This document shows positions 24,019-59,886 of a DNA stretch of 64,000 bases, in pieces. The notes beneath the pieces were generated by a model. The model saw only the letters and a list, made by a program, of their open reading frames with translations, did no database searches and had not been told where the DNA came from. Numbering within the stretch: position 1 is the stretch's first letter; each line of letters opens with the position of its first letter. The DNA lies in contig NC_091995.1 in assembly GCF_044704955.1 (NCBI RefSeq), positions 17,794,001-17,858,000 of the forward strand, in the 5' to 3' direction. Source of the stretch: Pristiophorus japonicus. Taxonomy: Eukaryota. The translations under genes and the position numbers were made by a program.

Positions 24019-24076
24019 ATGCAAACTATTCACATATGGACGATCATGAATTTAATGACAATATTGCTTCATTTCG
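24019..24076 (+). CDS. Gene B exon 1: signal peptide
   Basis: ATG CAA ACT...CAT TTC G|GTAAGT = MQTIHIWTIMNLMTILLHF + phase-1 G; perfect donor; 58 nt. Confidence 0.75.
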
Positions 24077-24740
24077 GTAAGTCACTGTCTTCTTATTTTC
24101 ACATTTTAATTCTTTATTTATTAAGGCGGACGAGTATGTGGTTTGTTTAAACAGAACTATTATATAATGAAGATATAGCACAGAAAAAACTGCTCTATGT
24201 TGTGCTATTTTGCCTTGAATCCACAATTTCTGCGGCATAAGCATTTTAACTTTCCGGCAACTTTATATATATGTTACACACATTAACGTTCTCCTCCATG
24301 CCATGAACGCATTGTTAAATATATATAATTAAGGGCCTATTAAAATGTACCTATGTAAATAAATTAAATCCCACACTGCTTACCGACTGTTTTATGCATG
24401 AAATTAACGAACATTTTATATCTCCTACCCGACAATTCAACGTCTGTGCATTAGATTGAAGATATCCGAACTGCAATGTCCCCCTAGTAGGAGAGAGAAC
24501 TAGAAGTGCATCAAGAAGCAATGGTTAAATGTTGTCAATGAAATCTTACAAAAAAACAAAGTAAAAACAAAGTAGATCCATCTTTATAAAGTGCTAATTT
24601 CCTCTAATTTCATGCCTTGTAAAGCTTCAGAATAGAGAGATCTGCTCGATCAAGTCCATACGACTATGGACTACAATTGTCAAAAGTTGCCTTGAGAAAC
24701 TGGAAAAAGAATAATATAATAAAACTAACGTTAACGTGCA

Positions 24741-25190
24741 CAGCTGTGGCTCAGTGGGTCCCACCCTCACCTCCGAGTCAGATATTTGTGGGTTCAAGTC
24801 CCTGTCCAGGGATCTGAGCACAAAATCAAGGCTGACACTCCAGAGCAGTGCTGAAGGAGTGCTGCACTGACGGAGGTGCTGTCTTTCGGAATTAACGTTA
24901 AACCGATGATCCATCTGTTCTATCAGGTGGATGTAACAGATCCCATGGTACTATTTCGAAGAAAAGTTGGGAGGTTATTCCCAGTGTACCTGGGTCAGTA
25001 TTTGTCCCTCAATCAACTTAACAAATAATCTGGTCATGATCACATTGCTGTTTTTGTGAGTTTGCTGTGCGCAACGTGACTGCCACGTTTCGCACATTAT
25101 AACAGTGACTACGTTTCAAAAGTACTTAATTGGCTGCAAAGTGCTTTGAGACGCCCGGTGGTCGTGAAATGTCCTCTATAAATGCAAGCT
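24741..25190 (+). mobile_element. tRNA-derived Deu-domain SINE (SacSINE1/AmnSINE-like)
   Basis: A box tggctcagtgg, B box ggttcaagtcc, Deu core gcactg.cggaggtgc.gtctttcgga, L2-like tail tataaatgcaag. Confidence 0.8.
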
Positions 25191-25589
25191 GAGGACATTC
25201 AGGTTGTTTCATCATTTTAACTATTGAATTCTGTTTGAATTTTACACATTCTCCAGTCACCAATGGTTAATAGAGAGATCACTGTGGTGTTTAGCATCTA
25301 TGTGACTTTCAACCTTTTCAGACTAATAAGATTAAACTTGCTCTCGCTTTCTGGAGCTGATTTTGAATTTGTGGGACGGGCGATATTGGATTAACCACCC
25401 GTTGTATACCTGGACCCGATTTCAACTGCAGGCAGCTGATCCAATCTCACCCGTTTTTCAACCTAAAGTTGGAATGACACCCAAATGCAAGAGCGCATCG
25501 GGTGAAGCGTTTAATTCAAGATTCCCAGTTCTGACCCTCGCTCAAAGTGTTAGAGAGATCTGAGGGTAGCGCAGAAAGCATATTAACAT

Positions 25590-26200
25590 GCAGTTACAGC
25601 AAGCGAAAAAGCAAATGGTATGGTGGCCTTTAGTACAAGAGGATTTGAGTATAAGAATAAAGACGTCTTACTGCAATTAAATAGACCACACCTGGAGTAT
25701 TGTGTACAGTTTTGGTCTCCTTACCTAAGCAAGGTTATATTTACCTTTGAGGTAGTGCAACAAATGTTTACCAGACTGATTCCTGGGATGAGGGATTGTC
25801 CAATGAAGAGAGATTGAGTGGACTAGGCCTATATTCTCTAGAGTTTAGAAGAATAAGAGGTGATCCTACAGGGCTTGATCGAGTAAATGCAGGGAGGATT
25901 TTTCCTCTGGCAGAGAAATCTAGAAACCGGGGTCAAAGTCTCAGAATAAAGAGTCGGCCATTTTGGACTGAGATAAGGAGAGACTTCTTCACTCAGAGGG
26001 TGATGAATCTTTGGAATTATCTACCTCAGTGGGATGTAGAGGCTCTATCTTTGAGTATATTGAAGACAAAGATCTATAGATTTTTGGATATTGAAGGATC
26101 AAATGATGTGGGGATAGTACGGGAGAGTGGAGTTGATGTAGAAGATCAGCCATGACCTCACTGAATGGCCTACTCCTGCTCCTAATCCTTATGTTCTAAT
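25590..26200 (+). mobile_element. CR1 3' fragment
   Basis: RPHLEYCVQFWSP, FFTQRVMNLWN. Confidence 0.8.
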
Positions 26201-26816
26201 TTTATTATAAAGATCAAGCCGGCACAATCGGGAGTACTGAAATTAAAATTAATGATTATTCTTTGGAAAGGGGCAGAGGTACTTTGTACCAGATCCATTC
26301 TGTACTTGACCTAGGAGTGCAACCGAAATTGAAAGGCACTCCATTTCCAGCTCCAATATCCCTCAAGTTAACCATTTATACCTCTTCTCGACTCATCTTT
26401 TGCTTCTTTACTTCTGCCATTACTATTTCCTTATGACTTGCATTATCATCCCTTTTGTCAGTTAATCTCTCCTGCCTTCCACCCTGTCGCAGACCATCCC
26501 GTTTGTTCTTTATTCCCCTCCCCTCTTTCACTGCCCCCTGCACCTGCTTAAAACCTGACACATCTTTACCTGTTTCCAGTTCGGGTTAAAGGTAATCGAC
26601 CTGGAACGTTAACTCTGATACTCTGTCTCCACAGATGCAGCCTGACTAATTGACTATTTCCAGAATTTTCTATTATTATACCGCCAATTAAAGATCATTA
26701 ATATGTCAGCATAAATCCTCAGAACAATATTTGATTGAAACCAGTCCTTCTGCGCCGTGTTTTAAGGCAATCACGTGCACTGCTTATTTATATATCGTCT
26801 GTTTACCCACTTGCAG

Positions 26817-27167
26817 CAACTACTGTTGGAAATATCACAGTATTTCAGAACCCGCAATCGCTCACCAAAACCGTGGGACAGACAGCGGACCTGGTCTGCA
26901 CATATGAGGGTACCGATGGAGTTGGCAGCTACAGTTGGCACCGAGGTTCCAAACAGGGAATTGAAGTTTCCAACAATACAGTGCAATACAGTGGCAGGGT
27001 GATGTTGGCAAGTAGAGAGGATTTCCGCCAGTTGAAAAACGCGTCCATTAGAATAATCCAACTGAAACCGGAAGATACAGGGATCTATTTTTGCAAAGTG
27101 CAGCTTGTAGGAATCGCTGCTGCATACGGACCTGGCACAACACTGAACGTGAGGCGTGGTGATGAAG
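26817..27167 (+). CDS. Gene B V1 exon: VJ-type Ig V domain (NCR3/NKp30-like, gene-A type)
   Basis: Acceptor tttacccacttgcag|, donor gaag|gtaagt, 351 nt, phase 1-1. Encodes ITVFQNP..LVC..YSW..GRV..DTGIYFC..YGPGTTLNV. Confidence 0.92.
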
Positions 27168-27329
27168 GTAAGTTTGGATTGGTGGAGTTATTCAGGCGAA
27201 TTAAATTGCACGCAATCATATGCTATTTTTCTAGGGAGTAATATTGGCGCGAAAGGTAAATGATCCATCAAGTCAATTGGAACTCCAAAACCCGCGACCT
27301 CCACCACCTCGAAGGTTAAGGGCAATAGG

Positions 27330-28140
27330 TAGAAACATAGAAATATAGAAACATAGAAAATAGGTGCAGGAGTAGGCCATTCGACCCTTCGAGCCTGCAC
27401 CACCATTCAATAAGATCAGTACCCCTTTCCTGCTTTCTCTCCATACCCCTTGATCCCTTTAGCCATAAGGGCCATATCTAACTCCCTCTTGAATATATTC
27501 AATGAACTGGCATCAACAACTCTCTGCGGCAGAGAATTCTACAGGTTAACAACTTTCTGAGTGAAGAAGTTTCTCCTCTTCTCAGTCCTAAATGGCCTGC
27601 CCCTTCTCCTAAGATTCTGCCCCCTGGTTCTGGACTTCCCCAACATCGGGAACATTCTTCCCGTATATAGCCTGTCCAGTCCAGTCAGAATCTTATACGT
27701 TTCTATGAGATCCCCTCTCATCCTTCTAAACTCCAGTGTATAAAGGCCCAGTTGATCCAGTCTCTCCTCATATGTCAGTCCAGCCATCCCTGGAATCAGC
27801 CTGGTGAACCTTCGCTGCACTCCCTCAATAGCAAGAACGTCCTTCCTCAGATTAGGAGACCAAAACTGAACACAATATTCCAGATGGGGCCTCACCAAGG
27901 CTCTGTATAACTGCAGCAAGACTTCGCTGCTTCTATACTCAAATTCCCTTGATATGAAGGCCAACATACCATTTGCCTTCTTCCCGCCTGCTGTACCTGC
28001 ATGCCAACTTTCAATGAATGATGAACCATGACACGCAGGTCTCGCTGCACCTCCCCTTTTCCTAATCTGCCGCCATTCAGATAATATTCTGCATTCGTGT
28101 TTTTGCCCCCCAAAGTGGATAACCTCACATTTATCTACAT
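27330..28140 (-). mobile_element. Young CR1 3' end in gene B intron
   Basis: (ATAGAAAC)n tail and RT C-terminus; absent from the inverted paralogue at ~57.7 kb. Confidence 0.88.
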
Positions 28141-29835
28141 ACATGGGGACACCACCACCTGCATGTTCCCCTCCAAATCAAACACCATCCTGACTTGGCC
28201 TTCTGTCGCGGTTACTTTCAAAACCTGGAACTCTCCCAAACAGCGCGGTGGGAGCACTTTCACCTCACGGACTGTAGCGGTTCAAGAAGAAGGCCAACCA
28301 GCACCTTCTCAAGGGCAATTTTGGGAGTGCAATACAAGGCGGCCTCGCCAGTGACGCCCAGATCCCGAGAGTGATTTTTTTTTGGAATAAATAAATGGAG
28401 GATATTCATAAAAATCAGTTGTGTATAATTTTAGGTAGGACTATAGACAATTATTCAACCCAGTTACAGTATTCAAGGCGAAGAGCAACACCTAAGCCTT
28501 GTAATTGCAGCGTGCCAATATTAGGAATAAACAGGTCAACACATCTATAAGTTAGATTTCACTGCCATCCTGTAAACGGAGATAGAGGCAGATAGAGTTG
28601 TGTGTGTAAATAGGAATTAATACATTGCACTCCATCTAAATGAATGCAACGATGGGTCCACGAAAGAACCACATTGACTACCCAGATTCGGCCATCTAAT
28701 ATCTGGATGGTCGTTTTGTCTTAAGCATCCCATAATTATGAGGGGACAATTTTCTCGTTCGTGCTCAGGGCCGCGTACATCTCCAGGGTCTAGGGAATTC
28801 AGGAAAAGTCGGCGGGAGGAGGAATACTCTCAAGATATTAAGGGGAACAGATAGGAAAGATGGAGATAAACTATTTCAGCTGTTTGGGGATTCTGGGACC
28901 GGGGGCATAGTCTAACATTTAGAAGCAGACTTTTCAAGAGCGAAATTAGAAAATTCTTCTCCACATAAAGGGTGGTAGAGGTTTGGCACTCTCTTTCATA
29001 AATGGCAATTGTAAATTTAAAATCTGTGATTGATAGCCTTTTATTCAACAAAGGCACTAAGGAATATGGAGTTAGGTTGCAAATCAGCTGTGATCTCAAT
29101 GAATGGCGGAGCAGGTTTGAAGTGTTAAATGGCCAAAACCTTTTCCTATGGTAACGGAACTCCACCAACCACCCCCCACCACCCCTCACATCCCATCCCA
29201 TTTAAAATAAATTAAAGTGGCACGAACCTATTAAGCTTCTCTACATTAAAATTCTCCCAGTGTTACTTCAGGGGTAGGAACATGTCCACTTGACCACCGG
29301 TGACATATTGCATTTTAATCGATGTCCTAGTTTTATGTATGCCAGTGTTAAGTATGAATCCGCATCCGGTGATCGTGAAAAATGCTATATAAATATTTAT
29401 TTAATAATTGCTCGCTAAATACTGTCTTATCAGTACTCTTCCTGGATTAGTATTTTAAATAACATGTCACTTATTGACAGATCAATATTTCTTTCTCCAG
29501 AAACGCATGTTGTCCCTTGAATCTATTTCTACTGCCCACACTAACGACCACCTCCAGTAACTTTTTCTACAAATCTATTACAATTTAGGCGTACCACCTG
29601 TCTTTCCTTCTTGCCTGTAGCTTGTTCATCGACAAGTTAATTAAATTGATTCATTGAATTCAAGACATGTGACACATTTTGCGCAGGCATATTGATCCTA
29701 TGTATTGCAATGAACAGACCATTAATTTGTGATATTGAATGATATTTTAAGATGAGCTTCAACTCTCCAGACAGAACTAAGTACTGGTCTGTAAATCTGT
29801 AGGAAATATTAAAGATTACTCCATTTATACTCCAG

Positions 29836-30174
29836 ACAGTGGGTTGATGAGTGGGATCAGAGTGTTCCAGACCCCGGGAGTGATTCACATAACAGAAGGT
29901 GGATCGGTGCAATTTAACTGCACTTTCGAAGCGAATGGCTCTTTCGGAGAAGTTATTTGGAGGCGGGCCTCGCAAAACCTGGAAGTGTCGGATCAGAATC
30001 TTTTCTATCAGAACCGGATAATGAAATCAGGTTCGCAATTATTTTCCCAAAAAATGGCTTTTCTTAAAATCATCAATTTATCGAATATGGACTCGGATGT
30101 TTACTACTGCGAGGTGAAAATTCCGTCGGATGGGAAAGGAAATGGGACAGGGACACAACTTACAGTAACTGACA
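29836..30174 (+). CDS. Gene B V2 exon: VJ-type Ig V domain (NCR3/NKp30-like)
   Basis: Acceptor ccatttatactccag|, donor a|gtgagt, 339 nt, phase 1-1. Encodes IRVFQTP..EGGSVQFNC..VIW..AFLKIINL..DSDVYYCEV..GKGNGTGTQLTV; the EGGS..C and GxGNGT motifs are typical of the NKp30 family. Confidence 0.92.
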
Positions 30175-30307
30175 GTGAGTAGAAAAGATCAGAGTTTATT
30201 GTAAGAATGTCCGAATCGTTCGACATTTATATAGCTGGGAATGTGCTATGCTAAGAGATTGTATCTCGGGTTTGTGAATTATATCCGAGTGTCAATATCG
30301 CTTTCAG

Positions 30308-30438
30308 AGTACTTTGACCACATTCGGTCGGCAGTTAATATCCTGAAAGTATTACATATCTTACCAGAATCCCGCTATTCAAGGTGCGATGCTGTAGTAC
30401 ACGGAAGCATTGGCGGAGACGATGCTCATCCCAAATGA
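30308..30438 (+). CDS. Candidate terminal exon after V2 (secreted form, or decayed TM exon)
   Basis: cgctttcag| phase 1: (K)YFDHIRSAVNILKVLHILPESRYSRCDAVVHGSIGGDDAHPK*; AATAAA at 30538-30543. Confidence 0.35.

Positions 30439-31294: not shown

Positions 31295-31295
<1 letters not shown>

Positions 31296-31322
<27 letters not shown>
31296..31322. repeat. (AT)n microsatellite
   Basis: Direct reading. Confidence 0.9.
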
Positions 31323-31325
<3 letters not shown>

Positions 31326-31419
31326 AAATATCAAGTGCAAGCTGAGTTTATGTCTACGGTGCGAACATAACGTTGACATTTATGAAGGATTGAATAAAAC
31401 TGTAATCCGTTAATCTTCG

Positions 31420-31790
31420 GTCTCAATGTACTGAGGGAGCTCTGCACTGTCAGAGGTGCTGTCTTTCAGATGAAACTTTATGCCGAGGCCCTGTCTGCTC
31501 TATCAGGTGAACGTAAAGGATCCCATGGCATTCTTTCAAAGAAGAGCAGGGGTGTCTTCCAGATGTCCTTGCCAATATTTATCGCTCAATCAACATAACA
31601 AAAGCAAATTAGCTGGTCATTATCACTTTGCTGTTTATGAGAGTTTGGTGTGTGCAAATTGGCTGCCGCGTGTCTTACATTACAACAGTAACTACACTCC
31701 AAAGAAAGATACTTCATTGGCTATAAAGCAGTTTGGAACATCCGGACTTCATGAAAGGCGCTATATAAATGCAAATCTTTCTTTGCTCGG
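31420..31790 (+). mobile_element. Deu-domain SINE (5'-truncated)
   Basis: Core plus aaaggcgctatataaatgcaa tail. Confidence 0.75.
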
Positions 31791-32299
31791 TGATGATTGA
31801 CTAATACAAATATAGTGTACTGGCCTAATTATTTTTAAAAGATTGTTTCTGGCCAAATTTGGAAAACGAGATTGATAAACAGAGTTGGTGTTGTTTTGTA
31901 TTAAGACACCACGGATTCTTTGCACACACATTTCTTAGAGGGCTTGGCAGGGACGATGTTTCCTATGGCTGAGGTGCCTAGAACCGTGATTACAGTTTCA
32001 AAATAAGTGGTCGGCCATTTAGGACTGAGATGAGGTGAAACGTCTTCACTCAGGGGATGGTGAATCTTCGGAATTCTCTACACCAGAGGGATGTGGAGCT
32101 CTGTCTTTGAGTATATTGAAGACAGAGTTTGCTAGATTTTTGAATATTAAGGCAATCAAGGGATATGGGGGCAGTTCAGGGAAGTGGAGTTGAGGTAGAA
32201 GATCGGTCATGATCTTATTGAACGGTAGAGCAGGATTGAAGGACCAAATGGCCTACTCCTGGTCTTAATTTTAGCTTATAATGCTTAAACAACTCAACG

Positions 32300-32820
32300 G
32301 CTGTGGTGGGATGCTTACTGCGTTCACCAGCACTTTGGGCGGCTGCATTTCAGATGTGAGCCACTGGTCATCTGTAGAGAAAGCGTCAATATATTGGTCA
32401 GTCACTAGCTTCTTATTGGCAAGCTTTATATATTTATTTGGGCTTTAACATGTACGAATATTTAGTTGCTCAAACTTTGTCCTTATGCAGAAATAAACAC
32501 ACAATGAAGTAACAGCGTAAATCAAGGCATTATTTCAACTATGTTGCATTGCTTATTTTGCAATGAATCCTCCATTTCTATAGTATAAGCCTGTTATCTT
32601 TCGGCGAACTTTATATATATATATATATTGCATCTACATATAATATATATATATATGGCACGTTAAAGGTTCTCCTCGAAGCAGGTGCTGACAATTTCTA
32701 TTAAGATACTAGCAAATTATTGGGGCTTTTCAAAATTGACTTCTGGAAATAAATTAACTCGCGGGCTCCTTAAATGTGTTATATATGAAATTATCTGACA
32801 TATTATACCTTCTACCTTTA
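32300..32820 (+). pseudogene. Decayed paralogue of the gene B 5'/leader region
   Basis: Aligns by eye with 23935-24430 (ctgcgttca.cagcacttt, tcagatgtgagc, aaataaattaa). The leader coding part is largely deleted and the donor ggtaagtcact has become ggtcagtcact. Confidence 0.65.
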
Positions 32821-33114
32821 CGCAGCAAGTCGTTAGGATCTGAAATGCACTGCCTGAAATTGTAGAGGAGGCAGACTCAATCATTGCTTTCAAAAGGGAA
32901 TTGGTTAAGTATCTGAAGGAAAAACATACAGGGCTACCGGGAAAGGATGGAGAGTGGGACTAGCTGAAGTGCTCTTACTGAGAGCCAGCATGGGCTCGAC
33001 ATGCCAAATGACCGCCTTCTGTGCTATTACCATTCTATGATTCTATAATTCTATATTGACATGTAATTCTGTGGGTAATTATTGACAGATTGCATTGTTC
33101 CGTTTATACTCTAG

Positions 33115-33277
33115 ACAGTGTGCTGATGAGTGAGATCAGAGTGTTCCATTCCCCAACTGCCATTCATGTAACAGAAGGTGGATCGGTGCAGCTGAAGTGC
33201 ACCTTCCAAGTGGATGGTTCTGTCGGATTAGTTGGTTGAAGGCTGGAATCACAAAATGTGGAGGTCACGGATCATAA
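33115..33277 (+). pseudogene. Truncated V3 pseudo-exon (paralogue of V2)
   Basis: ctctag|ac..: DSVLMSEIRVFHSPTAIHVTEGGSVQLKCTFQVDGSVGLVG*RLESQNVEVTDH. The core Trp codon is TGA, and the 3' half is missing at a repeat insertion. Confidence 0.85.
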
Positions 33278-33900
33278 AATACGCGGATGCTGGAAATCTG
33301 AAATCAAAACAGAAAATCTGTGGAGAAAAAGAAGACTTAAATTAATATGACACACTACTTCACTACCGGATGCCTCAAAGTGCTTTACAGACAATGAAGT
33401 GCTTATGAAGTTTAGTCACTGTAGTAATGCAAGAAACACGGCAGCTAATTTGTGCATCGCAAGCTCCCACAAACAGCAATGTGATAATGATCAGATTTGT
33501 TTTATTTATGTTGATTGAAGAAAAAATATTGGCCAAGATAGAGGGGATAACTCCCCTGCTCGTCTTCTCAATAGTGTTTTTACGTCTACCTGAGAGAGCA
33601 GACGGGCCCTTGGTTTAACATCTAATTCGAAAGACAGCACCTCTGACAGTACAGCACTCCTTCAGTACTGCACTTGAGTGTCAGCCTAGATTTATGTGCT
33701 CAAGTCCCTGGAGTGGGACTGTTAACCCACAACCTTCTGACTCAGAGGCTAGAGTGCTATCCACTGAATCACAACTGGGGGAAACAGAGTTAACATTTCA
33801 GGTTGCTGACGAAGGGTCAGCCACCTGAAATGTTAACTGTTTCTATGTCCACAGATGCTGCTAGGCCTGCTGAGTATTTCTAGCATTTCCTGTTTTATTA
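33277..33900. mobile_element. Palindromic Penelope-like terminal fragment (33277-33330 and 33780-33900)
   Basis: gatgctggaaatctgaaat..aaacagaaaat and its inverted counterpart; related copies at 26570-26680, 51630-51800 and 58385-58470. Confidence 0.5.
33335..33777 (-). mobile_element. Deu-domain SINE nested in a Penelope-like repeat
   Basis: cgaaagacagcacctctgacagtacagcactccttcagtactgcact. Confidence 0.75.
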
Positions 33901-34060: not shown

Positions 34061-34182
34061 GATCTACAGTTGAGATTATCTGCCATTTCCCCACACTCAA
34101 TGTTGGATTACAAGTCGCAAAAATGGTACTGCTGATCATTCTCATAATCACAGGCCTAACGATGCATTCTATCCTACGTTGA
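34061..34182 (+). CDS. Stalk/TM terminal exon with intramembrane Lys and no tail (activating type)
   Basis: Strong acceptor attgcttttgtttctgacag|, phase 1: (R)STVEIICHFPTLNVGLQVAKMVLLIILIITGLTMHSILR*. Confidence 0.78.
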
Positions 34183-41299: not shown

Positions 41300-41856
41300 G
41301 TCCCTGGATTCGGTAATAAAATGTGTAAGTATTCCCTGGACTTGAACTCATGGTGCAAGTGGTCACTGGAGTTAGATTCTCAATGTAAGTGGTCTCTGGA
41401 TTTTGTCTCTCGGTGTAAGTGGCCCTTGCATTTGGTCTCAGAATTGAAGTGGTAACTGCATTTGGTCTCAGGTATAAGTAGCCACTGGATTTGGTCTCAG
41501 GGCGCAAGCAGTCCCTGGATTTGGTCTCTCGGTGTAAGTGGTCACTGGATTTTGTCTCTCGGTGTAAGTGGCCCTTGCATTTGGTCTCAGAATTGAAGTG
41601 GTAGCTGGATTTGGTCTCAGGTATAAGTAGCCCCTGGATTTGGTCTCAGGGTGCAAGCAGTCCCTGGATTTGGTCTCTCGGTGTAAGTGGTCACTGGATT
41701 TTGTCTCTCGGTGTAAGTGGCCCTTGCATTTGGTCTCAGAGTTGAAGTCGTCCCTGGATTTGGTCTCAGGCTGTAAGTCGTCCCTGGATTTGGTCTCAGG
41801 GTGTAAGGAGTCCCTGGATTTGGTCTCTCGGTGCAAGTGGTCCCTGGATTTGGTCT
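41300..41856. repeat. 30-bp minisatellite with a 149-bp higher-order repeat
   Basis: Unit ~ctggatttggtctc(a/t)(g/c)ggtgtaagtggtcc, about 18 copies; higher-order units start at 41401, 41550 and 41699. Confidence 0.92.
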
Positions 41857-42869
41857 GAGGGTTTAATTGTCAACACCTCCTGATCCCAGTCAGGTTCACT
41901 CAACCAACTTCTCATGTTTCTTTTCTCAGCTCTTTCTTTCTCTAGCCTTGATATTTTTCTTTTTTTAATGGTGTGGGGGTGCAGTCTGGTGAAGTGGGAG
42001 TCCTTCCTGTCGAACTCCCGCTGTTTCACCATTTCTCTGCTCAAACTTTTCCATTGAGATTCATTTCATTTAAAACAGTTTTACCTTCAGCACAGAAGAG
42101 CGCAGCACCCCGCTGCAGAGAGACAGAAGGTGGCTGAAAGTCGGGTGGAGCCGACCTGCAAAAACCAATGTCAAAGGCATGAAAGGCCAGAGAGAGACCT
42201 GGAAAACTGATTGGACAATCAGCGAGCACCTGGGAGGCTGAGATGTATGGGACTCAATGGCACGTGACACGAAGTTAGTGGAGGGGCTGGGAGATGTTTG
42301 TGGGCCGGATGAAACTGGAGGACAGGAGAATGCTTTGTGACTATAAGTGCACGCAAATATCACTAACAGTAAATTCCACTATGTAACCGTAATGTGCCTG
42401 AGGCCATTGCTTGTGATTTGTGATGAGCACCTACATCTGTATTCAGATTGTGCAGTTAAAGGTATCCCACTTATTTTATTGATGTACATACAGGTAAGAA
42501 CAGGCACAATGGGTGGAATGACTTCCTTCTGCGTTGCCTCATTCAATAGGAGGAACTATTGGAACGATGGGAATGTTGATATCCATGAGTCCAACTGAAG
42601 TTGTAGCAAGCATTCTGCAGTACAGGGGCAATGGGAGCAAGTGCAGCCAATGAAAAGTTGAAATCCACTCTCATTTCCTTGCCCCGAACTGAATTCATTC
42701 AAATATGAGCCTGAAAAATTCTGAGAACAATCTATTCCAGTTCCTAATGGGTATCTTTGCACAGAACAGATCTTCAACATTGATTGTCACAAAAGTGGAA
42801 ATCTCCTATTATCGTTAAAACCCTTACATCCGGGGCAGAGGATTGTGGCTGATGTCCTGCTGCAGGAAT

Positions 42870-50746: not shown

Positions 50747-51160
50747 ATGAAAGTATCACATACTATATAGGATTATAATGAAATGCAGTCAGTTGCGTGA
50801 TGAAATTAGGTCGATTGAACAGTAACCGGTATCAAAGTTGAACATGTTGGCATCCATTTTAACAGATGTATGAATCTGTTTATTGTCTCGTATAGCACGC
50901 CCCTAAGAATAGGGGACTAATACATTTCATAAAGAAGGTGACAAATGTTCTCAACTAATACTAAAGAGCCTACTGTTAAAGCATTGGAGATTTGAAGTCC
51001 TTGCTATTGAATCATTTCCATGGAAGATTCTCCGATTATCCGCCGTTGAAGATCCCAGAGTACCCCGCGTTTCTGCCAAAGCTATGGCGGGAGAGCGGGA
51101 CAACTCTGCGAAAATTGTACCCCCAGTCTATCGGGGGCGTCTCACCATTGGGACGGATTG

Positions 51161-51280
51161 TCACGGCTCCGCTTCCTTCGCCAAAGCGTACAGCACCGCT
51201 TCTCGATTCACGGGACACTCTATTTGATTGCTCTCATGCAGATTCAGCGTGGCGTATTGCAAATTGCCATCGCCCTTTTC
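51161..51280 (-). CDS. Gene A terminal exon with ITIM(s)
   Basis: Acceptor ctttcatctcaatag|, phase 0: EKGDGNLQYATLNLHESNQIECPVNREAVLYALAKEAEP*. LQYATL fits (I/V/L)xYxx(L/V); VLYALA is ITIM-like; minus-strand AATAAA downstream. Confidence 0.8.
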   Translation of the reverse strand, partial: EKGDGNLQYATLNLHESNQIECPVNREAVLYALAKEAEP

Positions 51281-52223: not shown

Positions 52224-52282
52224 CTCGTTTATTTTTTAGATTGTTACACACCACGGAGTGAACTCTTTATATTCTAATCTAC
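52224..52282 (-). CDS. Gene A candidate cytoplasmic linker exon (phase 1->0) carrying an in-frame TAA
   Basis: Strong acceptor ctcttgtttacttttccag|, donor gag|gttgga, 59 nt. Reads (G)RLEYKEFTPWCVTI*KINE; the phase bridges the TM exon and the ITIM exon. Confidence 0.45.
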
Positions 52283-52649
52283 CTGGAAAAGTAAACAAGA
52301 GGTCAGTAGTTTTAAAAATGACATAAGTAGCCCACGTCATTGTTGTACATACCAGATTTGGTCTTCTGCACTCAGAGCTGTCATTATTCCTCTCTATAAA
52401 GCATAGAATAGAAACATATTTATTTATATGAATTTATATAGCGCCTTTAATGATTACCGGGCGTCACAAAGCGCGATACAGCGAATAAATATTCATTTTT
52501 GAAGTTTAGTTACTCTTGAATGTAGGAAAAGCGATTTTGCACACAGTAAGCTGCCACAAACAACATCGCAATAATGACCAAATAATTTGTTTTTGTTATG
52601 TTAACTGGGGGATCAATATTGGCGAGTAGGGAATAACTCCACTGCACTT

Positions 52650-54530
52650 CGAAACATAGAAACATAGACACTTACAGCGCAGAAGGAAGCCATTCTGGAC
52701 CATCGTGTCCACGCCGGCCGACAAAGAGCCACATGGCCCTTGGTCAGCAGTCCTAACGGTTACATATAAACCTATGAACAATGAAGGAAAGACAAAGAGC
52801 ACCCAGCACAACCAATTCGCCTCACCACAATGTAACACCCCTTACACTAAAACATTCTACACTCTACCCCAACCGGAGCCATGTGATATCCTGGGAGCCG
52901 AAAAAAAGCGAGGTCAATTTAGGGAGAAAAAATCTGGGAAAATTCCTCTCCAACCGATCCAGGTGATCGAAACTAGTCCAGGAGATCACCCTGGCCGTAT
53001 TCTATTCCCTGCAGTACTTACTATTATATCTGCTTCGTCCAACAAAATGTCATCCCGTCTAATCCCAATTACCTGCAGGTTACTGCACTTTAGAGTGCCC
53101 ATCCAACCATCTCTTAAAAGTGGTGAGGGTTTCTCCATCCACCACTCTCCAAGCAGCGAGTAACAGATCCCCACAACGCTCTGCGTAAAGAACCCCCCCC
53201 CCCCTCAAATCCCCTCTAGACCTTCTATCAACCACCTTAAAACTATGCCCTCCTCTCAATAGACCCCTGCACCAATGGGAATAGACCCTTACTATCCACT
53301 ATAACCAGGCCCCTCAATGAGGTCTCCTGTCAACCTCCTCTGTTCCAATGAGAACAACCCCGGCCTCTCCAAGTTATCCTCATAACTAAGATTCTCCATT
53401 CCAAGCAGCATCCGAGTAAATCTCCTCTGCACCCTATCTAGTGCAATCACATCCTTCCTATAATAAGGCGATCAGAACTGCATGCAATACTCCAGCTGTG
53501 GCCTAACCAAAGTATTATACAATTTAAGCACAACGTCCCTGCTCTTATATTCTATGCCAATAAAGGCAAGCATTCCATATGCCTTCTTCACCAACTTATT
53601 CACCTGGCCGGCTAATTTCAGGGATTTATGGAAAAGTACTCCAAGGTACCTTTGTTCATCTACACTATTAAGTGGCCTACCGCTTAATGAGTATTGCCTT
53701 TCCTTATGAGCCCTCCCAACGTGCATCACCTCACACTTCTCTCAATTAAATTCCATTTGCCACTGCTCTGTCCACCTGACCAGCAGATCGATATCCTCCT
53801 GCAGCCAATAACTTCCGTCTTCATTATCAACCACACAACAAATGTTAGTGTTGTCTGCAAACTTCTTAATTATACTCCCTCGATTCAAATATAAATCGTT
53901 GATATATACCACAAAAAACAATGGTCCCGGTACTGAGCGCAGCGGAATCCCACTGGAAACATCCTTCCAGTCACAAAACATCCATCAATCATTACACTTT
54001 GCTTCCTACCTCCAAGCCAATTTTGGATCAAATTTGACACTTTGCCCAGTATTCCATGGCTTTAACCATCATGACCAGTCTACCATGTTTGACCTTATCA
54101 AAAGCTTTGCTAAAGTCCATATATACTACATCGTATGCGCTATCCTCAGCGACCCTCTTGGTTGCCTCCTCAAAAAATTCAATCAGGTTAGTCAGACAAG
54201 ATCTTCCCTTAACAACTCTGTGCTGACTGTCCCTAATTAATCGTTGCCTTTCCAAATGCAGATTTATCCTGCCTTTCAGAATTTTTTCCAATAATTTTCC
54301 CAACACTGAGGTTAGGCTGATAAGCCTGTAATTACTAGGTCTATGTCTTTCTCCCTTCTTAAACAAGGGCATTAGTAGTCCTCCAATCTTCCAGCACCAT
54401 GTCCAGATCCAAATAGGACTGGAAAATGAGAGTTATGGCCCCTGCTATTTCTTCTTTTATTTCGCTCAACTGCCTGGGATACATTTCATCCGGGCCTGAG
54501 GACTTAGCTGTTTGCAAATCTTCTAAATAA
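52650..54530 (-). mobile_element. CR1 (long-3'UTR subfamily, as at 14358) in gene A intron
   Basis: Tail at 52650; RPQLEYCMQF, FADN, DFSKAFDKV. Confidence 0.85.
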
Positions 54531-54569
54531 TGCGGCAGTATCTTTTACGTCCACATGAGATCGCAGACT

Positions 54570-55060
54570 AGGATTGATTGCACTGGAAAGGGTGCAGAAG
54601 TGATTTACAAGCATGTTGCCTGAACTGGCGAATTTGGGCTATAAGGACAATTTGGAAATACTGGGTCTGTTTTCTTTGGAACAGAGGAGGCTAAAGGGAG
54701 ACCTGATCGAGGCGTATAAAATTATGAGCGGCCTGGAGAAAGTGGATAGAAAGGATATGTTTCCCTTGGCAGAAGGGTCAATAACCAGGAGGCATAGATT
54801 TAACGTTATTGCGGGGGATTTTAGAGGAGAGATGAGGGGAACTTTCTTCACCCAGAGGGTGGTGGTGATCTGGAACTCATTGCAAGAAAAGGGTGGTCGA
54901 GGCAGGAACTTCGCCACATTTAAAACCTGCTTGCATGTGCAATTAAAGTGTTATGGAACAAGAGTTCGAAAGTGCGATTAGGTTGGATAGCTCTTTGTCG
55001 GCCTGCGTGGAAAAGATGGGCCGACATGGCCTCTTTCCATGCTGTGAATTTCTATGATTC
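54570..55060 (+). mobile_element. CR1 3' fragment
   Basis: LFSLEQRRLKGDLIE, FFTQRVV. Confidence 0.8.
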
Positions 55061-56267
55061 AGACATCTGAAAGACGGCACCGCCCACAATGCAGTGCTCC
55101 GTCAGTGCTACACTGGAGTGTAAGCCGAGGTTTTTGTACTACAAGTCCCTGGAGTGGGACACAAACCTACGACCTTCCGATTCAGGGCGAGTGTGCTACC
55201 AAGTGAGCCGCGGGAAAGGACCCTGTATAATTTAATTTAATTGAACAATGTATAGAATACAATAGGACGTGCAATGCCATCAACATAGCGCTGTAATGCA
55301 CTGTGTTATAATGCAATCGGATACAACATAACATGGGAGAAAACAGTAGAACGCAATTAAATAAAATGCAGTAGGATGTACCACATTGCACAACAATAAA
55401 ATGATACAATTACTATGGTCCAATATATAATACTGTACCACACAATGTAAAACAGCATAAAGTTTTACTGTTTAACTGTTTACTTTAAACTGGTGAGCAA
55501 AGCAACTTGATCTGAGCGCACCGAGCATTCGTACGAGAATAGAGTGATGTCTAGTATAATATATTATAATATAATACTGAAACGTACATCACAATATCAT
55601 GTAATCATTTGTCACAAAAAAAATCAGCGTGCGAGAAGAAAATATTTTAAAATATTATGCTAACCATAAACTTAATCTCTCAAATTGACTTTGTGACCAA
55701 GACGTCTAATATGTGTCAATTAATAGCCGTTCTAGAAGCAAGAGTTATTGATTCATAAAATAATACAGTACAGAAGGATGCCATTAGGCCCAACCTGCCT
55801 GTGCTCGCACTCTGACAGAGCTACATATTAGTCCTGCTCTTCCCAATAGCCCTGAAAAATTACCCCTTTTTAAGTACTTATTCAATTCCCTTTTGAAAGT
55901 TACCGCTGGATCTGCTTCCACCAACGTTGGTGGCAGTGCATTCCAGCTCATGGCCACTCGCTGAGTAATAAAAAAATAATCATCTCCTCACCTGGCTCAT
56001 ATATGCCAGTTATCTCAACTCGGTGTCCTCTGGTTACAAGACAGTGTAATGACATAATAGATTGTTTTATTCGTTCACGGGATGTGGGCTTCGCTAGCAA
56101 GGCGGGAATTTATTACCCATCCCTATTTGCCCTTGAGAAGGTGGCGAGCAATATTGGGCGCATGTAAACGCAATGTTCCACCCGATCTCGTTCGTTTGCC
56201 ATCCGGTGAGTTAGGATGAATTTGACAATCATATGGAGATCAGTAGAGTTACAATTCGTGCTTTTAC

Positions 56268-56369
56268 CTCTCTTACAACGCCGGCTGATAACAACGACAA
56301 TGACTATAACGATGATCAGGAGAGGCGAGGCTCCCGCTGCAAAGACGCCGTTGCTGCTCTCTCCACAAT
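56268..56369 (-). CDS. Gene A exon 3: stalk and uncharged transmembrane segment
   Basis: Acceptor tttacatttacacacag|, donor ag|gtaaaa, 102 nt, phase 1-1. Reads (Y)CGESSNGVFAAGASPLLIIVIVIVVVISRRCKR: hydrophobic run, basic stop-transfer, stalk Cys. Confidence 0.82.
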
Positions 56370-57893
56370 CTGTGTGTAAATGTAAAGGTTCCTTGTGAGA
56401 CAAAGGAGCCATGGCAGGGTAACGTTCACATTGAGATTGAGGATCAGTAAATGTGACAGAGATTCCAATCCCCTTTGACATGCTGGTCTAAATTCATATT
56501 TAACACTTGCATACATCAACAAGACAACTGATGAAAATGCATAATATCATCGATGGTCAACACCTTTGAAGTAACACTGAGAGAATTTTAATGAAGGGAC
56601 GCTTAATAGGTGGGTGCCAATTTCCATTCTTTTAAATGGAATGTGTGTATTGGTGGGGGGGGGGGGGGGAGGGGCGCCCGTGTGAGTTCCCTTATCATAG
56701 GAACTGGAAGAGGCCATTTTTCCCCTCAAGCCTGCTTCGCCATTCAATGAGGTCATGACCGACTTGCAACCTAACTACATATCCCTTAATAACTTTGTTT
56801 TAAAAAATGCTATCAATCACAGATTTCAAATGTACAATTGACTCAGCAACGATTGCCATTTGCGGAAGAGAGTGCCAAACTTCTACCACCCTTTGTTTGC
56901 AGAAATGTTTCCTAATTTCACTCCTGAAATGTCTGGCTCTAATTTTTAAATTATGCCGCCGGGTCCTATAATCCCCAAACTGTTGAAATAGTTTCTCTCT
57001 ATCTACCTCTCTGTTCCCCATAATATCGTGAGAGTGTCGCTCCTCCCGGCGAGCTTTCCTGAATTCTCTAGACCCAGGAGATCCATTCGGCCCCAGTACT
57101 AACGAGAAAATTGTCCGTTCGTATTTACGGGATGCTGCAGACAAAACAATGAGTTGGATATTAGATTGCCGTAAATGGATGGGCAACGAGGTCCTATCGT
57201 GGACCCATCTTTGCATTTAGATGGAGCGCAATGTGTTAATTTCTATTTACACGCACAACTATATCTGCCTCGATCTCCATTTATAAGATGGCAGTGAAAT
57301 CGAACTTATCATAGACTTGTTAATCTGTTTATTCCTAATATTGGCACGCTGCAATTTAAAGGCTCACGTGTTGCTCTCCTTAATGGGCTGCAGTTGTCGC
57401 CTTACATACTGTAACTAGGTTGACTACTTGTGCATAGTTCTACCTAAATGATACATAATTGAACGTAATTAGTATCCTCCATCGATTTATTCTAAAAAAA
57501 TAATTCTCAGGATATGGGTGTCGCTGGGGAAACCTGCATTGATTGCCCATCCTAAATTGCCATTGCGAAGGTGGGCCTTCTTCTTGAACCGCTGCAGTCG
57601 TGAAGTGAAGGTACTCCCACAGCGCTGTTAGGAAGGGATTGCCAGGGATTTGAAAGGAACGTCGATATAAGTCCAAGTCAGGCTGCTGTGTGACTTGGAG
57701 AGGAACTTGGAACTTGGGCTGCTCCCATGCACCTGCTGCTCTTTTCCTTCTAGGTGGTGGAGGACACGGGTTTGGGAGTACCAATTGATCTAGTGGATAC
57801 TGTGTCTATACTGCCAATATTACTCCCTAGAAAAATCCCACATGATTGCGTGCAATTTCATTGGTAAGAATATCTCGACCAATCCAAACTTAC

Positions 57894-58241
57894 ATTCTTC
57901 ACCACGTTTCACGACCAGTATTGTGCCGCTTCCGTAAGCAACACCGATTCTCACGAACTCCACTTTGCAAATATAGAAACCTGTATCTCGCGGGCCCAGT
58001 TGGATTATTCTAATGGATGCTGTTTTCCTCTGACGGAAATCCTCTTCGTCTGTCCGGAACACCCTTCCTCTGTATTCGTCTGTACTGTTGGAAACTTCAA
58101 TTCCATGTTTGGAGCCTCGGTGCCACTTGTAGCTGCCGATTCCTGCTGGACCTTCATATGTGCAGACCAGGTCCACTGTCTGTCCCACGGTTTTGGTGAG
58201 AGATTGCGGGCTCTGAAATACGGTGATATTTCCACCAGTAA
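57894..58241 (-). CDS. Gene A exon 2: VJ-type Ig V domain (NCR3/NKp30-like)
   Basis: Acceptor ttttgcccacttatcacag|, donor |gtaagt, 348 nt, phase 1-1. Encodes ITVFQSP..LVC..YKW..GRV..ASIRIIQL..DTGFYIC..YGSGTILVV (both Cys, core Trp, D-x-G-x-Y-x-C, J-like GxGT). Confidence 0.92.
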
Positions 58242-59843
58242 CTGTGATAAGTGGGCAAAAGAGACCATTTATAAATAGGCAGTGCACGTCTTTGCTTTAC
58301 AATACTACGTGAAGAAGCTGGTTTTAAACAAATATTGTTCTGAGGAATTTTGACCAGGTATTAATGATCTTTAATTGGGGGTATAATAAACAGAAAATGC
58401 CGGAAATACTCAGCAGCTCGGGTAGCATGTGTGGAGAGAGAGCAACAGAGTTAACGTTCCAGGTCGATAGCATTTTGCCAGACCAATGTCTGTGATAGTT
58501 GGAAGGCAGGAGAGTATAATTCACAAAAGGAATGTTGATGCAAGGCATAAGGAGATGGTAAAGGGACAAGTAAGGCACAAAAGGAGTGTCTAGAAGTGGT
58601 GTAAATGGTTAACTTGAGGTTTATTGGAACTCGAAATGGAACGGCTTTTGATGATGGGTACATTCCCAGGGCAAATATAGCATGGATCCGGTAAAAAAAA
58701 AGTACCTCAACCCTTTCCAAATAAAAAGCATTAACTTTAATCTATGCACTCCTGATTATGCCGCCGTGATATATACATAAGAAAATATGAATATAAGGAT
58801 TAGGAGCAGGAGTAGGCCAGTCGGCCCATCGAGCCTGCTCCACTATTCAATAAGATCAAGGCTGATCATCGACCTCAATTCCACTTTTCCGCCCTATCCA
58901 CATATCCCTTGATTCCCTATGACTCCAAAACTCTACCTATCTCATTCTTGAATATATTCAGAAACTGAGCATCCACAGCTCTCTGGGGTAGAGAATCCCA
59001 AAGATTCATGACCCTCTGAGAGAAGAAATTCCTTCTTATTTCCGTCTTAAATGGGCGACCCCTTTTTCTGAAACTATGCCCCTAGTTCAAAATTATCCCC
59101 GAGTGAGTTAGCCCCACGCCTTTCTCCCATATCTCTGCAATATTTTCTTTCAAGTATTTGCCCATATTCCCTTTTGATGGTTGCTATTGAATTTTTATCC
59201 ACTACCTTATCAGGCAGAGTACTGCGGCAGTATGTACTTCAGGGAGCAAAACACATCGTGCTCTCCTGGACCAAACACAATAAATCTAGTTACCCGAGAG
59301 CCGATCAGTCTCTCATCTTTTAGCTGTAATCTCTCGCGATCTATTTCAGTCTCACTTCCTCTCACACATGCGTACGTACAAGTATGAATGGAACCCATTT
59401 CTCTTTGTGTGTTTTATGCATAACGTTCTCCTCAACTCTCTTTTCCCATTCCTAACCATCAATTCTTGATTTACTTTGTCTTCTCTTGCCTTGGTGTTGT
59501 CCTGCGCCATGGGCCATTGGCCTTTCAGCGAAATGCCCCAGTCCAAAAAAAGCAACATCGAAAGATAACAGATAGCAGAATAAGATTGAACCAGGTTCAC
59601 AGATGATCTAGTAAACATCAGAAAAAAAGTGAGGACATTGCTATCGGTAATTAATAACGAATTAAGTAATGCAATATTTCATTAAAGTCATTGTGAAATC
59701 AATAGAAATGATAATCAGTCCCTCTCAATAACAGCCGGCCACACCGCAGCGCCCGTTTCACTGCTAGGCGGCAAGTTGACAATCTCCCTTATATATTTAT
59801 ATAGACCTGATGTGTCAGAAATTGATATTAAAACGCTGCTTAC

Positions 59844-59886
59844 CGGAGATCATCGTGATTGCCCAGGTAACTGCAGCCCAATTCAT
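59844..59886 (-). CDS. Gene A exon 1: signal peptide of an NCR3/NKp30-like inhibitory receptor
   Basis: ATG AAT TGG...TCC G|GTAAGC = MNWAAVTWAITMIS + phase-1 G; 43 nt; strong donor; phase matches the V exon; paralogous copy at 1750-1792. Confidence 0.8.

What the first reader, a model, noticed from the sequence alone, without database searches (positions are those of the whole stretch)
24019..59886. Paired inhibitory/activating receptor system built from germline-joined VJ (NKp30-like) domains in a shark
Seen: two convergent spliced genes with phase-compatible exons. Gene A is L-V-uncharged TM-tail with LQYATL and VLYALA. On the other strand are L-V1-V2 and a tail-less TM exon with a Lys, and V1 matches gene A's V at 81 of 113 aa (hand count). 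Established: related ectodomains coupled to either ITIMs or a charged TM define paired receptor families (KIR, LILR, Ly49, teleost NITR, Xenopus XMIV), and human NKp30 is a single charged-TM receptor. Inference: this is an expanded elasmobranch NCR3-like paired receptor locus. The ORF track hides it because the leader, Lys-TM and ITIM exons are not called.
Basis: partly seen in the sequence, partly recalled or inferred. Interest (0 to 1): 0.88.

Follow-up and report, generated by a model that had tools for sequence, protein, structure and literature searches.

The report
Shark NKp30-family receptor gene cluster
This stretch holds part of a shark cluster of NKp30 (NCR3)-family immune receptor genes: one looks like a conserved inhibitory receptor, and its proposed activating partner is a patchwork gene whose membrane anchor is unproven.

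Summary
The paired-receptor reading is only half supported.

Gene A (- strand, 59886 to 51161) belongs to the known elasmobranch NCR3/NKp30 family. Its V domain is 66% identical to nurse shark NCR3. Its tyrosine-motif tail exon is conserved in horn shark and catshark NCR3-like proteins. However, the TM exon ends in phase 1 and the tail exon starts in phase 0, so joining them directly destroys the ITIM. A 41-nt candidate micro-exon (52393-52353) restores the frame but is unproven.

Gene B (+ strand) is a patchwork. Its leader and V2 are orthologous to a second NCR3 subtype, which in other sharks is leader-V-TM followed by a long tyrosine-motif tail. Its V1 is an inverted copy of gene A's V exon plus flanking intron (82/115 aa). 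The usual TM and tail exons of that subtype are not detectable. A dead leader copy and a broken V2 copy lie before the Lys-TM exon. That exon has good splice signals and the right phase, but no homology support.

No RNA run was listed. ITIM-bearing and Arg-TM NCR3-like proteins are already annotated in sharks, so this is a new member of a known kind. The scan also noted NKp30-like genes nearby in this genome.

The parts
59844..59886 (-). Gene A leader exon (ATG at 59886; 14 codons + 1 nt; donor G|gtaagc, phase 1)
   Evidence: Sequence read. 11/15 identical to the N-terminus of the Heterodontus NCR3-like protein P0007. A paralogous copy lies at 1792-1750.
57894..58241 (-). Gene A V exon (348 nt, phase 1 to phase 1): VJ-type V-set domain with a GSGT J-like motif
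   Evidence: Pfam V-set E=4e-10. Best solved structure is NKp30, 1.5e-11 against 1.7e-6 for the next hit. 66% identical to nurse shark NCR3. Falls in a clade with SH-aLRT 96 that includes it.
56268..56369 (-). Gene A stalk/TM exon (102 nt, phase 1 to phase 1): a stalk Cys, an uncharged TM, then a basic stop-transfer stretch
   Evidence: Weak similarity to the TM segments of P0001 and P0008, ending at the same place.
52353..52393 (-). Candidate 41-nt cytoplasmic micro-exon (ttatag|...|gtatgt; phase 1 to phase 0) that would put the ITIM exon in frame
   Evidence: Best splice score among the 46 phase-correct candidates in the 5-kb intron, and the one most like the Heterodontus cytoplasmic segment. 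The similarity is not significant (p about 0.34). The sequence is unique in the window. Unverified.
51161..51280 (-). Gene A terminal exon: ITIM LQYATL, then 24 residues on (Tyr to Tyr) VLYALA, then stop; phase-0 acceptor caatag|G
   Evidence: Homologous to the tails of Heterodontus P0007 (21/32, E=2.6e-8), Scyliorhinus P0001 (E=1e-5) and Chiloscyllium P0008. Alignment of the double motif.
50879..50884 (-). First AATAAA downstream of gene A's stop (about 280 nt)
24019..24076 (+). Gene B leader exon (ATG at 24019; donor G|gtaagt, phase 1)
   Evidence: 14/19 identical to the leader of the Heptranchias perlo protein P0165 (tblastn E=7e-6). Joined directly to V2 it recreates the orthologue's junction residue Asp.
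26817..27167 (+). Gene B V1 exon (351 nt, phase 1 to phase 1): an inverted duplicate of gene A's V exon
   Evidence: 82/115 aa, 81% nt, dN/dS 0.73. Sister to A_V in the tree, SH-aLRT 94. NKp30 is the best single-domain PDB hit.
26595..29359 (+). Inverted duplication block shared with gene A (= 58468-56492): V exon plus about 220 bp of upstream and 1.9 kb of downstream intron, 76-80% identical. It ends about 120 bp before gene A's TM exon.
   Evidence: blastn; identity and indel counts.
29836..30174 (+). Gene B V2 exon (339 nt, phase 1 to phase 1): VJ-type V domain of a second NCR3 subtype
   Evidence: Pfam V-set E=4.5e-10. 64% identical to Heptranchias P0165, 60% to Heterodontus NCR3-like P0067 (61% by blastp), 55% to nurse shark NCR3 P0169.
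32286..32620 (+). Dead copy of the gene B leader region (a 47-bp deletion removes the ATG and most of the leader)
33062..33277 (+). Broken V2-like pseudo-exon (first half only, with an in-frame stop), followed by repeats
   Evidence: 76% nt identity to 29790-29998.
34061..34182 (+). Candidate terminal exon: a stalk with a Cys, a hydrophobic segment with one Lys near its outer end, a 5-residue tail, then TGA; phase-1 acceptor after a long pyrimidine tract
   Evidence: A pattern scan finds only 2 such exons in 128 kb, against 0.45 in shuffles. It is unique, non-repeat sequence. It has no homology to the family's TM segments.
1750..1792 (-). Leader exon of a third gene (gene C), paralogous to gene A; the rest of the gene lies before the window start
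   Evidence: 10/14 aa match to gene A's leader. The flanks are 77-83% identical to gene A's leader region and first intron.

Best explanation
The window covers part of an elasmobranch NCR3 (NKp30) multigene cluster with three genes.

Gene A (- strand) is a single-V NCR3-family receptor of the same subtype as nurse shark NCR3 and a horn shark NCR3-like protein. It has a leader, a VJ-type V domain, a Cys-containing stalk, an uncharged TM, and a cytoplasmic tail that ends in a conserved ITIM (LQYATL) followed by a second, degenerate tyrosine motif (VLYALA). By analogy with other ITIM receptors it most likely dampens lymphocyte or NK-like cell activation by recruiting SH2-domain phosphatases; this step is inferred. 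Its mRNA must contain at least one small exon between the TM exon and the tail exon. The best candidate is 52393-52353.

Gene B (+ strand, convergent) began as a member of a second NCR3 subtype (leader starting MQTI, one V, a TM, and a long tyrosine-motif tail). An inverted copy of gene A's V exon with its flanking intron landed in gene B's first intron and became V1. The 3' part of gene B was rearranged. The subtype's usual TM and tail exons are not detectable, and a dead leader copy and a broken V2 copy lie downstream of V2. The only candidate membrane anchor is an unrelated Lys-containing terminal exon at 34061-34182. If that exon is used, gene B would be an adaptor-dependent activating-type receptor that shares gene A's ligand-binding domain. 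Whether it is used is open (about 45%).

Gene C (leader at 1792) is a further gene A-type paralogue.
For: - Family: HMMER against 1.84 billion representatives gives 307 hits. The best are elasmobranch NCR3 or NCR3-like proteins.
- PDB: NKp30 is the best solved relative of A_V and the best single-domain relative of V1.
- Tree: A_V and V1 are sisters (SH-aLRT 94) inside a clade (96) with nurse shark NCR3, P0007, P0008 and P0001.
- Tail exon: homologous to the tails of P0007, P0001 and P0008. The double tyrosine motif is shared by NCR3-like proteins of sharks, lungfish, sturgeon and salamanders.
- Splice phases were read directly.
- Gene B's leader and V2 are orthologous to Heptranchias P0165, Heterodontus P0067 and nurse shark P0169.
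- The duplication block was mapped.
- V1 has stayed intact although it diverges at the intron rate. The joint chance of that under neutrality is about 0.03.
- The dead leader and broken V2 copies are documented.
- The Lys-TM exon is rarer than chance: 2 in 128 kb against 0.45 in shuffles.
Against: - Every junction is therefore predicted.
- The micro-exon's likeness to the Heterodontus tail is not significant.
- The Lys-TM exon shows no similarity to Arg-TM segments of the family or to the stalk/TM of V2-type orthologues. The criteria of the pattern scan were set after the exon had been seen.
- The second tyrosine motif has Ala at Y+3, so it is not a canonical ITIM.
- A_V and V1 diverge as fast as the introns (81% against 80% identity). 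One copy drifting neutrally is therefore not excluded.
Confidence: 0.7

Rival explanations
1. Gene B is a working activating receptor (leader-V1-V2-Lys TM-5-residue tail) that signals through an ITAM adaptor (a DAP12-, FcR gamma- or CD3 zeta-like chain). Together with ITIM-bearing gene A it forms a true paired inhibitory/activating system that recognises the same ligand.
For: - All four gene B exons are phase-1 compatible and sum to an open frame of 289 codons.
- V1 is A_V's closest relative.
- The Lys sits about 4 residues into the hydrophobic segment, where NKp30 and many NCR3-like proteins carry an Arg.
- Exons of this kind are rare in the window and in shuffles.
- The acceptor follows a long pyrimidine tract and the exon is not repeat-derived.
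Against: - The Lys-TM exon has no homologue.
- Orthologues of gene B's leader and V2 have long tyrosine-motif tails and mostly uncharged TMs.
- A dead leader and a broken V2 copy lie in the V2-to-TM intron.
- The nearest poly(A) signal is 1.1 kb downstream.
- There is no RNA evidence.
Confidence: 0.28
2. Gene B is a decaying or truncated chimera. The Lys-TM 'exon' is a chance ORF. The locus yields nothing, or only a soluble leader-V(1)-V2 product: reading through the V2 donor adds 2 codons and then a stop. Only gene A (and gene C) are working receptors.
For: - The subtype's usual TM and tail exons are undetectable in the 17 kb up to gene A's 3' end.
- Internal pseudo-copies show that the region has been rearranged.
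- A_V and V1 diverge at the neutral intron rate.
- The V2 ORF ends 2 codons past the donor.
Against: - Leader, V1 and V2 are all intact with consensus splice sites and conserved core residues. The joint chance of that for V1 alone under neutrality is about 0.03.
- dN/dS is 0.73, below 1.
- The Lys-TM exon's combination of features is unlikely by chance at this position.
Confidence: 0.4
3. V1 is not part of gene B's product. It is an orphan fragment of an inverted segmental duplication lying in gene B's first intron. Gene B is expressed as the ancestral single-V form (leader spliced directly to V2).
For: - Joining the leader directly to V2 reproduces the orthologues' sequence exactly at the junction (…H-x-D-x-G-L-M-S).
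- All exons are phase 1, so skipping V1 keeps the frame.
- The duplication carried no leader, TM or tail from gene A.
Against: - V1 keeps a good acceptor and a consensus G|gtaagt donor, so the spliceosome should recognise it.
- It has stayed open and kept its structural residues.
- Multi-V NCR3-like proteins are common in shark annotations.
Confidence: 0.3

Closest known systems
Shark NCR3 family (Kinlein et al. 2021, Immunogenetics 73:333; nurse shark NCR3 QTT61898.1 = P0005 and a second nurse shark NCR3 = P0169)
   Same: Single-exon VJ-type V domain. A_V is 66% identical to P0005 and V2 is 55% identical to P0169. The family is multigene with divergent subtypes.
   Different: Gene B combines V domains of two subtypes in one gene and lacks the second subtype's usual TM and tail. 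The paper's text was not held, so what it says about ITIMs or charged TMs could not be checked.
Heterodontus francisci NCR3-like protein XP_067865395.1 (P0007), with the first half of Scyliorhinus canicula XP_038671257.1 (P0001)
   Same: Same architecture as gene A: leader, V, stalk, uncharged TM, and a tail ending in xQYAxLNL…VLYAxx. The V is 65% identical to P0007 and the tail 21/32.
   Different: Their second motif is VLYATV, a canonical ITIM; the window has VLYALA. Their juxtamembrane segment is longer (about 45 aa); the window may have only one 41-nt exon there.
Human NKp30 (NCR3; PDB 3NOI, 3PV6, 6YJP)
   Same: Best solved relative of A_V (E=1.5e-11). I-type/VJ-like single Ig domain, stalk, then TM.
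   Different: Human NKp30 has an Arg in its TM, no ITIM, and signals through CD3 zeta/FcR gamma (established knowledge). Gene A has an uncharged TM and an ITIM. Mammalian NCR3 lies in a separate clade of the tree.
Arg-TM NCR3-like proteins: Chiloscyllium plagiosum XP_043533794.1 (P0006, V-V-TM), Bombina and Aquarana NCR3 or NCR3-like proteins, and the Xenopus XMIV family
   Same: One to three VJ domains, a basic residue about 3-4 residues into the TM, and a short tail. P0006's V domains cluster with ITIM-tailed shark proteins P0020 and P0027, so paired forms already exist in annotations.
   Different: The basic residue there is Arg in a recurring I/V-R-I/V-x-L context. The window's exon has Lys and shows no detectable similarity to them.
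Classical paired receptor families (KIR, LILR, SIRP alpha/beta, teleost NITR)
   Same: A recent duplicate of an inhibitory receptor's ligand-binding domain placed on a different signalling module.
   Different: Here the activating module is unproven, and the duplicate sits in a two-domain ectodomain of mixed origin.

Membership tests
NCR3 / NKp30 family | Non-rearranging VJ-type V-set domain encoded by one exon (G-x-G-T J-like motif, no RSS split) | tested here: met
   All three V exons are single ORFs with Pfam V-set hits and GSGT, GPGT or GTGT motifs.
NCR3 / NKp30 family | V domain closer to NCR3 than to other IgSF V families | tested here: met
   A_V: NKp30 scores 1.5e-11 against 1.7e-6 for the next PDB hit. 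V1: NKp30 is the best single-domain hit. The top database hits are named NCR3 or NCR3-like. For V2 the PDB test is ambiguous (TCR alpha and NKp30 score about the same), but its orthologues are named NCR3. No tree with outgroups could be built.
NCR3 / NKp30 family | Groups with bona fide shark NCR3 in a phylogeny | tested here: met
   A_V and V1 fall in an 8-row clade (SH-aLRT 96) with nurse shark NCR3, inside a 34-row clade in which every named sequence is elasmobranch (95). V2 is a long branch and is not placed.
NCR3 / NKp30 family | Arg in the TM and a short tail (mammalian NKp30 signalling mode) | tested here: not met
   Gene A's TM is uncharged and its tail carries an ITIM. Gene B has only a candidate Lys-TM exon. 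Shark family members also lack this feature, so it defines the mammalian orthologue, not the family.
NCR3 / NKp30 family | Linkage to the MHC; binding of B7H6 | not testable with these tools
   The window holds no other genes, only transposon debris. No binding test is possible.
Paired inhibitory/activating receptor system | Closely related ectodomains in neighbouring genes | tested here: met
   A_V against V1: 82/115 aa. They are sisters in the tree and share 2 kb of flanking intron at about 80% identity.
Paired inhibitory/activating receptor system | Inhibitory member with a cytoplasmic ITIM joined in frame to the TM | tested here: inconclusive
   The ITIM exon is conserved. The direct join is out of frame, and the candidate micro-exon is unverified.
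Paired inhibitory/activating receptor system | Activating member with a charged TM and short tail that is really expressed and pairs with an ITAM adaptor | tested here: inconclusive
   The exon's features are rarer than chance, but there is no homology and no RNA. Adaptor binding is not testable.
ITIM-bearing inhibitory receptors | (I/V/L/S)-x-Y-x-x-(L/V/I) motif(s) in the tail | tested here: met
   LQYATL fits. VLYALA has Ala at Y+3 and does not fit; orthologues have VLYATV.
ITIM-bearing inhibitory receptors | Tyrosine phosphorylation and SHP-1/SHP-2/SHIP recruitment | not testable with these tools
   Needs biochemistry.

The most novel reading that the evidence does not exclude
The locus has caught a paired receptor at birth. 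An inverted duplication moved the ligand-binding V exon of an ITIM-type NCR3 gene into a neighbouring NCR3 gene of another subtype. That gene lost its own inhibitory TM and tail and now ends in a newly recruited Lys-TM exon. The result would be a two-domain, adaptor-dependent activating counterpart that competes with gene A for the same ligand, in one of the oldest jawed-vertebrate lineages.
Probability: 0.27. Interest if true: 0.55.

Novelty: new member of a known kind. Interest (0 to 1): 0.36.

Why it matters
NKp30 is the one NK-cell receptor that can be traced from sharks to humans, and its VJ domain is thought to predate the rearranging antigen receptors. This report gives exon-level models of two further family members in an unannotated shark genome. 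It shows that the inhibitory tail needs a hidden micro-exon. It also maps an exon-shuffling event between two NCR3 subtypes. This is useful for annotation and for studying how inhibitory and activating pairs arise. It does not open a new question: ITIM-tailed and charged-TM NCR3-like genes are already visible in shark, lungfish, sturgeon and amphibian annotations.

Tried and rejected
1. The search for homologous proteins on A_V found nothing. The exhaustive HMMER search was needed instead.
3. A profile of Arg-TM segments from 13 family members did not pick out the Lys-TM exon; it was not among the first ~480 rows inspected of 2,244.
4. Alignment of the Lys-TM peptide to the stalk/TM of six V2-type orthologues gave p = 0.15-0.6 against shuffles.
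5. A profile of the V2-subtype C-terminal halves found no TM or tail exon anywhere in the window; the best E was 0.48, on the wrong strand.
6. I tested whether the Lys-TM exon is a decayed V exon. An 80-bp stretch upstream of it resembles the stretch upstream of A_V and V1. I rejected the idea: I read that stretch as a common repeat motif, and the exon region has no significant DNA similarity to any V exon region (p = 0.6-0.97).
7. I looked for a relic of an A-type leader or A-type TM exon in gene B and found none.
8. The similarity of micro-exon 52393-52353 to the Heterodontus 'ETNNSSERRG' segment is not significant, either window-wide or within the intron.
9. The Kinlein 2021, Flajnik 2012 and Ohta & Flajnik 2015 papers are not held. 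Only their titles were seen, in reference lists.
10. The joined spliced models were not searched as joined sequences. Only exon lengths and phases were summed.
11. The sigma-70 promoter scan is irrelevant to a vertebrate gene.

Full report
WHAT IS THERE. Six-frame ORFs and direct reading of the sequence show three intact immunoglobulin V exons. All match Pfam V-set (E 4e-10 to 5e-13), and each ends in a J-like G-x-G-T-x-L-x-V motif within the same exon. On the - strand lie a leader (ATG 59886, donor at 59844), a V exon (58241-57894) and a stalk/TM exon (56369-56268, uncharged TM). An ORF starting exactly at 51280 encodes LQYATL and VLYALA and then a stop. On the + strand lie a leader (24019-24076), V1 (26817-27167), V2 (29836-30174) and a terminal exon (34061-34182). 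That last exon encodes a Cys-containing stalk, a hydrophobic segment with one Lys, five more residues and TGA. The hand count of V1 against gene A's V (81/113) also holds: tblastn and a codon alignment give 82/115.

Every junction is phase 1 except the last one in gene A. The TM exon ends AGA G|gtaaaag (phase 1). The tail exon begins caatag|GAA in phase 0, and the codon just upstream in that frame is TAG, so the exon cannot be extended. A direct TM-to-51280 join reads 15 out-of-frame codons and then a stop, with no ITIM. At least one intervening exon with phase 1 in and phase 0 out is required. Among the 46 phase-correct, stop-free AG…GT candidates in the 5-kb intron, a 41-nt exon at 52393-52353 (ttatag|…|gtatgt) has the best splice signals. 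It is also the most like the Heterodontus cytoplasmic segment, and it lies in unique sequence. The similarity is not significant, however (p about 0.34), so this is a candidate only. With it, gene A sums to 654 nt, or 217 codons plus a stop (with the stop corrected to 51161).

FAMILY. No hit came from the word-indexed protein search. The exhaustive HMMER search gave 307 hits at E ≤ 0.001. The best of them are named as follows:
- nurse shark 'natural cytotoxicity triggering receptor 3' (QTT61898.1, 66% identity);
- Heterodontus francisci NCR3-like / SIRP-like XP_067865395 (65%);
- Chiloscyllium punctatum NCR3 (61%);
- a Scyliorhinus model (53%).

Among solved structures, human NKp30 is the best relative of gene A's V (1.5e-11, next 1.7e-6). 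It is also the best single-domain relative of V1. For V2 it ties with TCR alpha. In a maximum-likelihood tree of 96 V domains, A_V and V1 are sisters (SH-aLRT 94). They sit inside a clade (96) with nurse shark NCR3, the Heterodontus, Chiloscyllium and Scyliorhinus proteins and one unnamed sequence. That clade lies within a larger clade (95) in which every named sequence is elasmobranch. Mammalian NCR3 and the mainly amphibian NCR3-like proteins form separate clades. V2 is a long branch that is not placed. No outgroup sequences were available, so the tree is unrooted evidence.

GENE A IS AN ITIM-TYPE FAMILY MEMBER. The tail exon matches the C-termini of the Heterodontus protein (21/32, E=2.6e-8), the Scyliorhinus protein (E=1e-5) and the Chiloscyllium protein. 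In those models the tail follows leader-V-uncharged TM. The double motif (xQYAxL…about 20 residues…VxYAxV) recurs in NCR3-like proteins of white shark, lungfish, sturgeon and salamanders. The first motif in the window is a canonical ITIM. The second has Ala where orthologues have Val. That gene A inhibits through SH2 phosphatases is an inference from the motif, not something shown here.

GENE B IS A PATCHWORK. V2 has close relatives that the first search ranked low:
- Heptranchias perlo P0165 (64%);
- Heterodontus NCR3-like P0067 (60%);
- a second nurse shark NCR3, P0169 (55%).

Gene B's leader is 14/19 identical to the Heptranchias leader (E=7e-6). Joining the leader directly to V2 recreates the orthologues' junction residue (…H-x-D-x-G-L-M-S). 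The ancestral gene was therefore leader-V2-TM-tail. In all six orthologues the TM is followed by an 80-90-residue tail with tyrosine motifs, and only one of them has an Arg in the TM. Neither tblastn nor a profile of those C-terminal halves finds such exons anywhere in the window.

V1 belongs to an inverted duplication of gene A. Coordinates 26595-29359 match 58468-56492 at 76-80% identity, and the match stops about 120 bp short of gene A's TM exon. Exon and intron have diverged equally (81.3% against 80.0% identity). dN/dS is 0.73. The intron rate of frameshifting indels is 12 per 1.6 kb. A simulation of 33 substitutions gives about 0.11 for no stop with the five core residues kept, and the indel rate gives about 0.27 for no frameshift. 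The joint chance of V1 staying intact under neutrality is therefore about 0.03. This is modest evidence that V1 is maintained by selection.

Between V2 and the Lys-TM exon lies debris from a partial internal duplication. One piece is a leader copy whose ATG is removed by a 47-bp deletion (32286-32620). The other is the first half of a V2 copy with an in-frame stop (33062-33277).

THE LYS-TM EXON. Several features favour it. The acceptor follows a long pyrimidine tract. The phase is right. The stalk has a Cys, as the orthologues' stalks do. The basic residue is about four residues into the hydrophobic stretch, where NKp30 and many NCR3-like proteins carry an Arg. The sequence is not repeat-derived. 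A pattern scan finds only two such terminal exons in both strands of the window, against 0.45 per shuffle. That implies well under 0.05 expected at this place and phase, although the criteria were set after the exon had been seen.

Other results count against it. It shows no similarity to Arg-TM segments or to the orthologues' stalk/TM. It is not a decayed V exon either. The first poly(A) signal is 1.1 kb downstream, and there is no RNA. I put its use at about 45%, and the full activating reading at about 27%.

CONTEXT. A third leader at 1792-1750 (- strand), with 77-83% identical flanks, marks another gene A-type gene that runs off the window start. Other notes place more NKp30-like V-exon arrays 52 kb and 381 kb away. 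The rest of the window is LINE and SINE debris.

COMPARISON WITH WHAT IS KNOWN. A paper on the shark NCR3 family exists (Kinlein et al. 2021; title seen). From memory it reports eight divergent, MHC-linked subtypes in nurse shark, but its text was not held. Public annotations already show both signalling types in sharks. ITIM tails occur in Heterodontus, Scyliorhinus and Carcharodon. An Arg-TM, short-tailed, two-V protein occurs in Chiloscyllium plagiosum, and its V domains cluster with the ITIM-tailed ones. The kind of system is therefore known. What is particular here is the chimeric origin of gene B and the hidden micro-exon that gene A needs.

VERDICT. This is a new member of a known kind, of moderate to low interest unless transcripts prove the Lys-TM form.

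Noticed in passing
window 1750-1911 (- strand): Leader exon and upstream region of a third NKp30-like gene (gene C). It is 83% identical to gene A's leader region over about 430 bp, and the rest of the gene lies before the window start.
   Followed up: partly
window 32286-32620 and 33062-33277 (+ strand): A partial internal duplicate of gene B's 5' end. The leader copy has a 47-bp deletion that removes the ATG. The first half of a V2 copy has an in-frame stop and is followed by repeats.
   Followed up: yes
window 16000-20000: A G+C-rich block (58-61%) with long ORFs: a 359-aa ORF with a weak, sub-threshold zinc-knuckle (zf-CCHC) match, and an apurinic-type endonuclease domain. It looks like a young non-LTR retrotransposon (LINE), possibly of the Tx1 kind noted earlier for this genome.
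   Followed up: partly
window 41323-41866: A minisatellite of 30-bp units (about 18 copies; higher-order period 149, 90% matches). It gives repetitive 'ETKSRD…' ORFs on both strands.
   Followed up: partly
window 23180-23455, 24741-25122, 31428-31701, 33402-33778, 52426-52600, 55069-55206, 60291-60657: At least seven copies of a roughly 380-bp interspersed repeat (68-83% identical) are scattered through the introns and flanks of the receptor genes. One ends 33 bp upstream of the candidate micro-exon.
   Followed up: no
window 56369-56268 and 34061-34182: Both stalk/TM exons encode a membrane-proximal Cys, as the 'DCP' stalks of the V2-type orthologues do. This would allow disulfide-linked dimers.
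   Followed up: no
window 30168-30182: Reading through the V2 donor adds only two codons (S-E) before TAG. An unspliced or intron-retaining transcript would therefore encode a soluble V1-V2 (or V2) protein.
   Followed up: no
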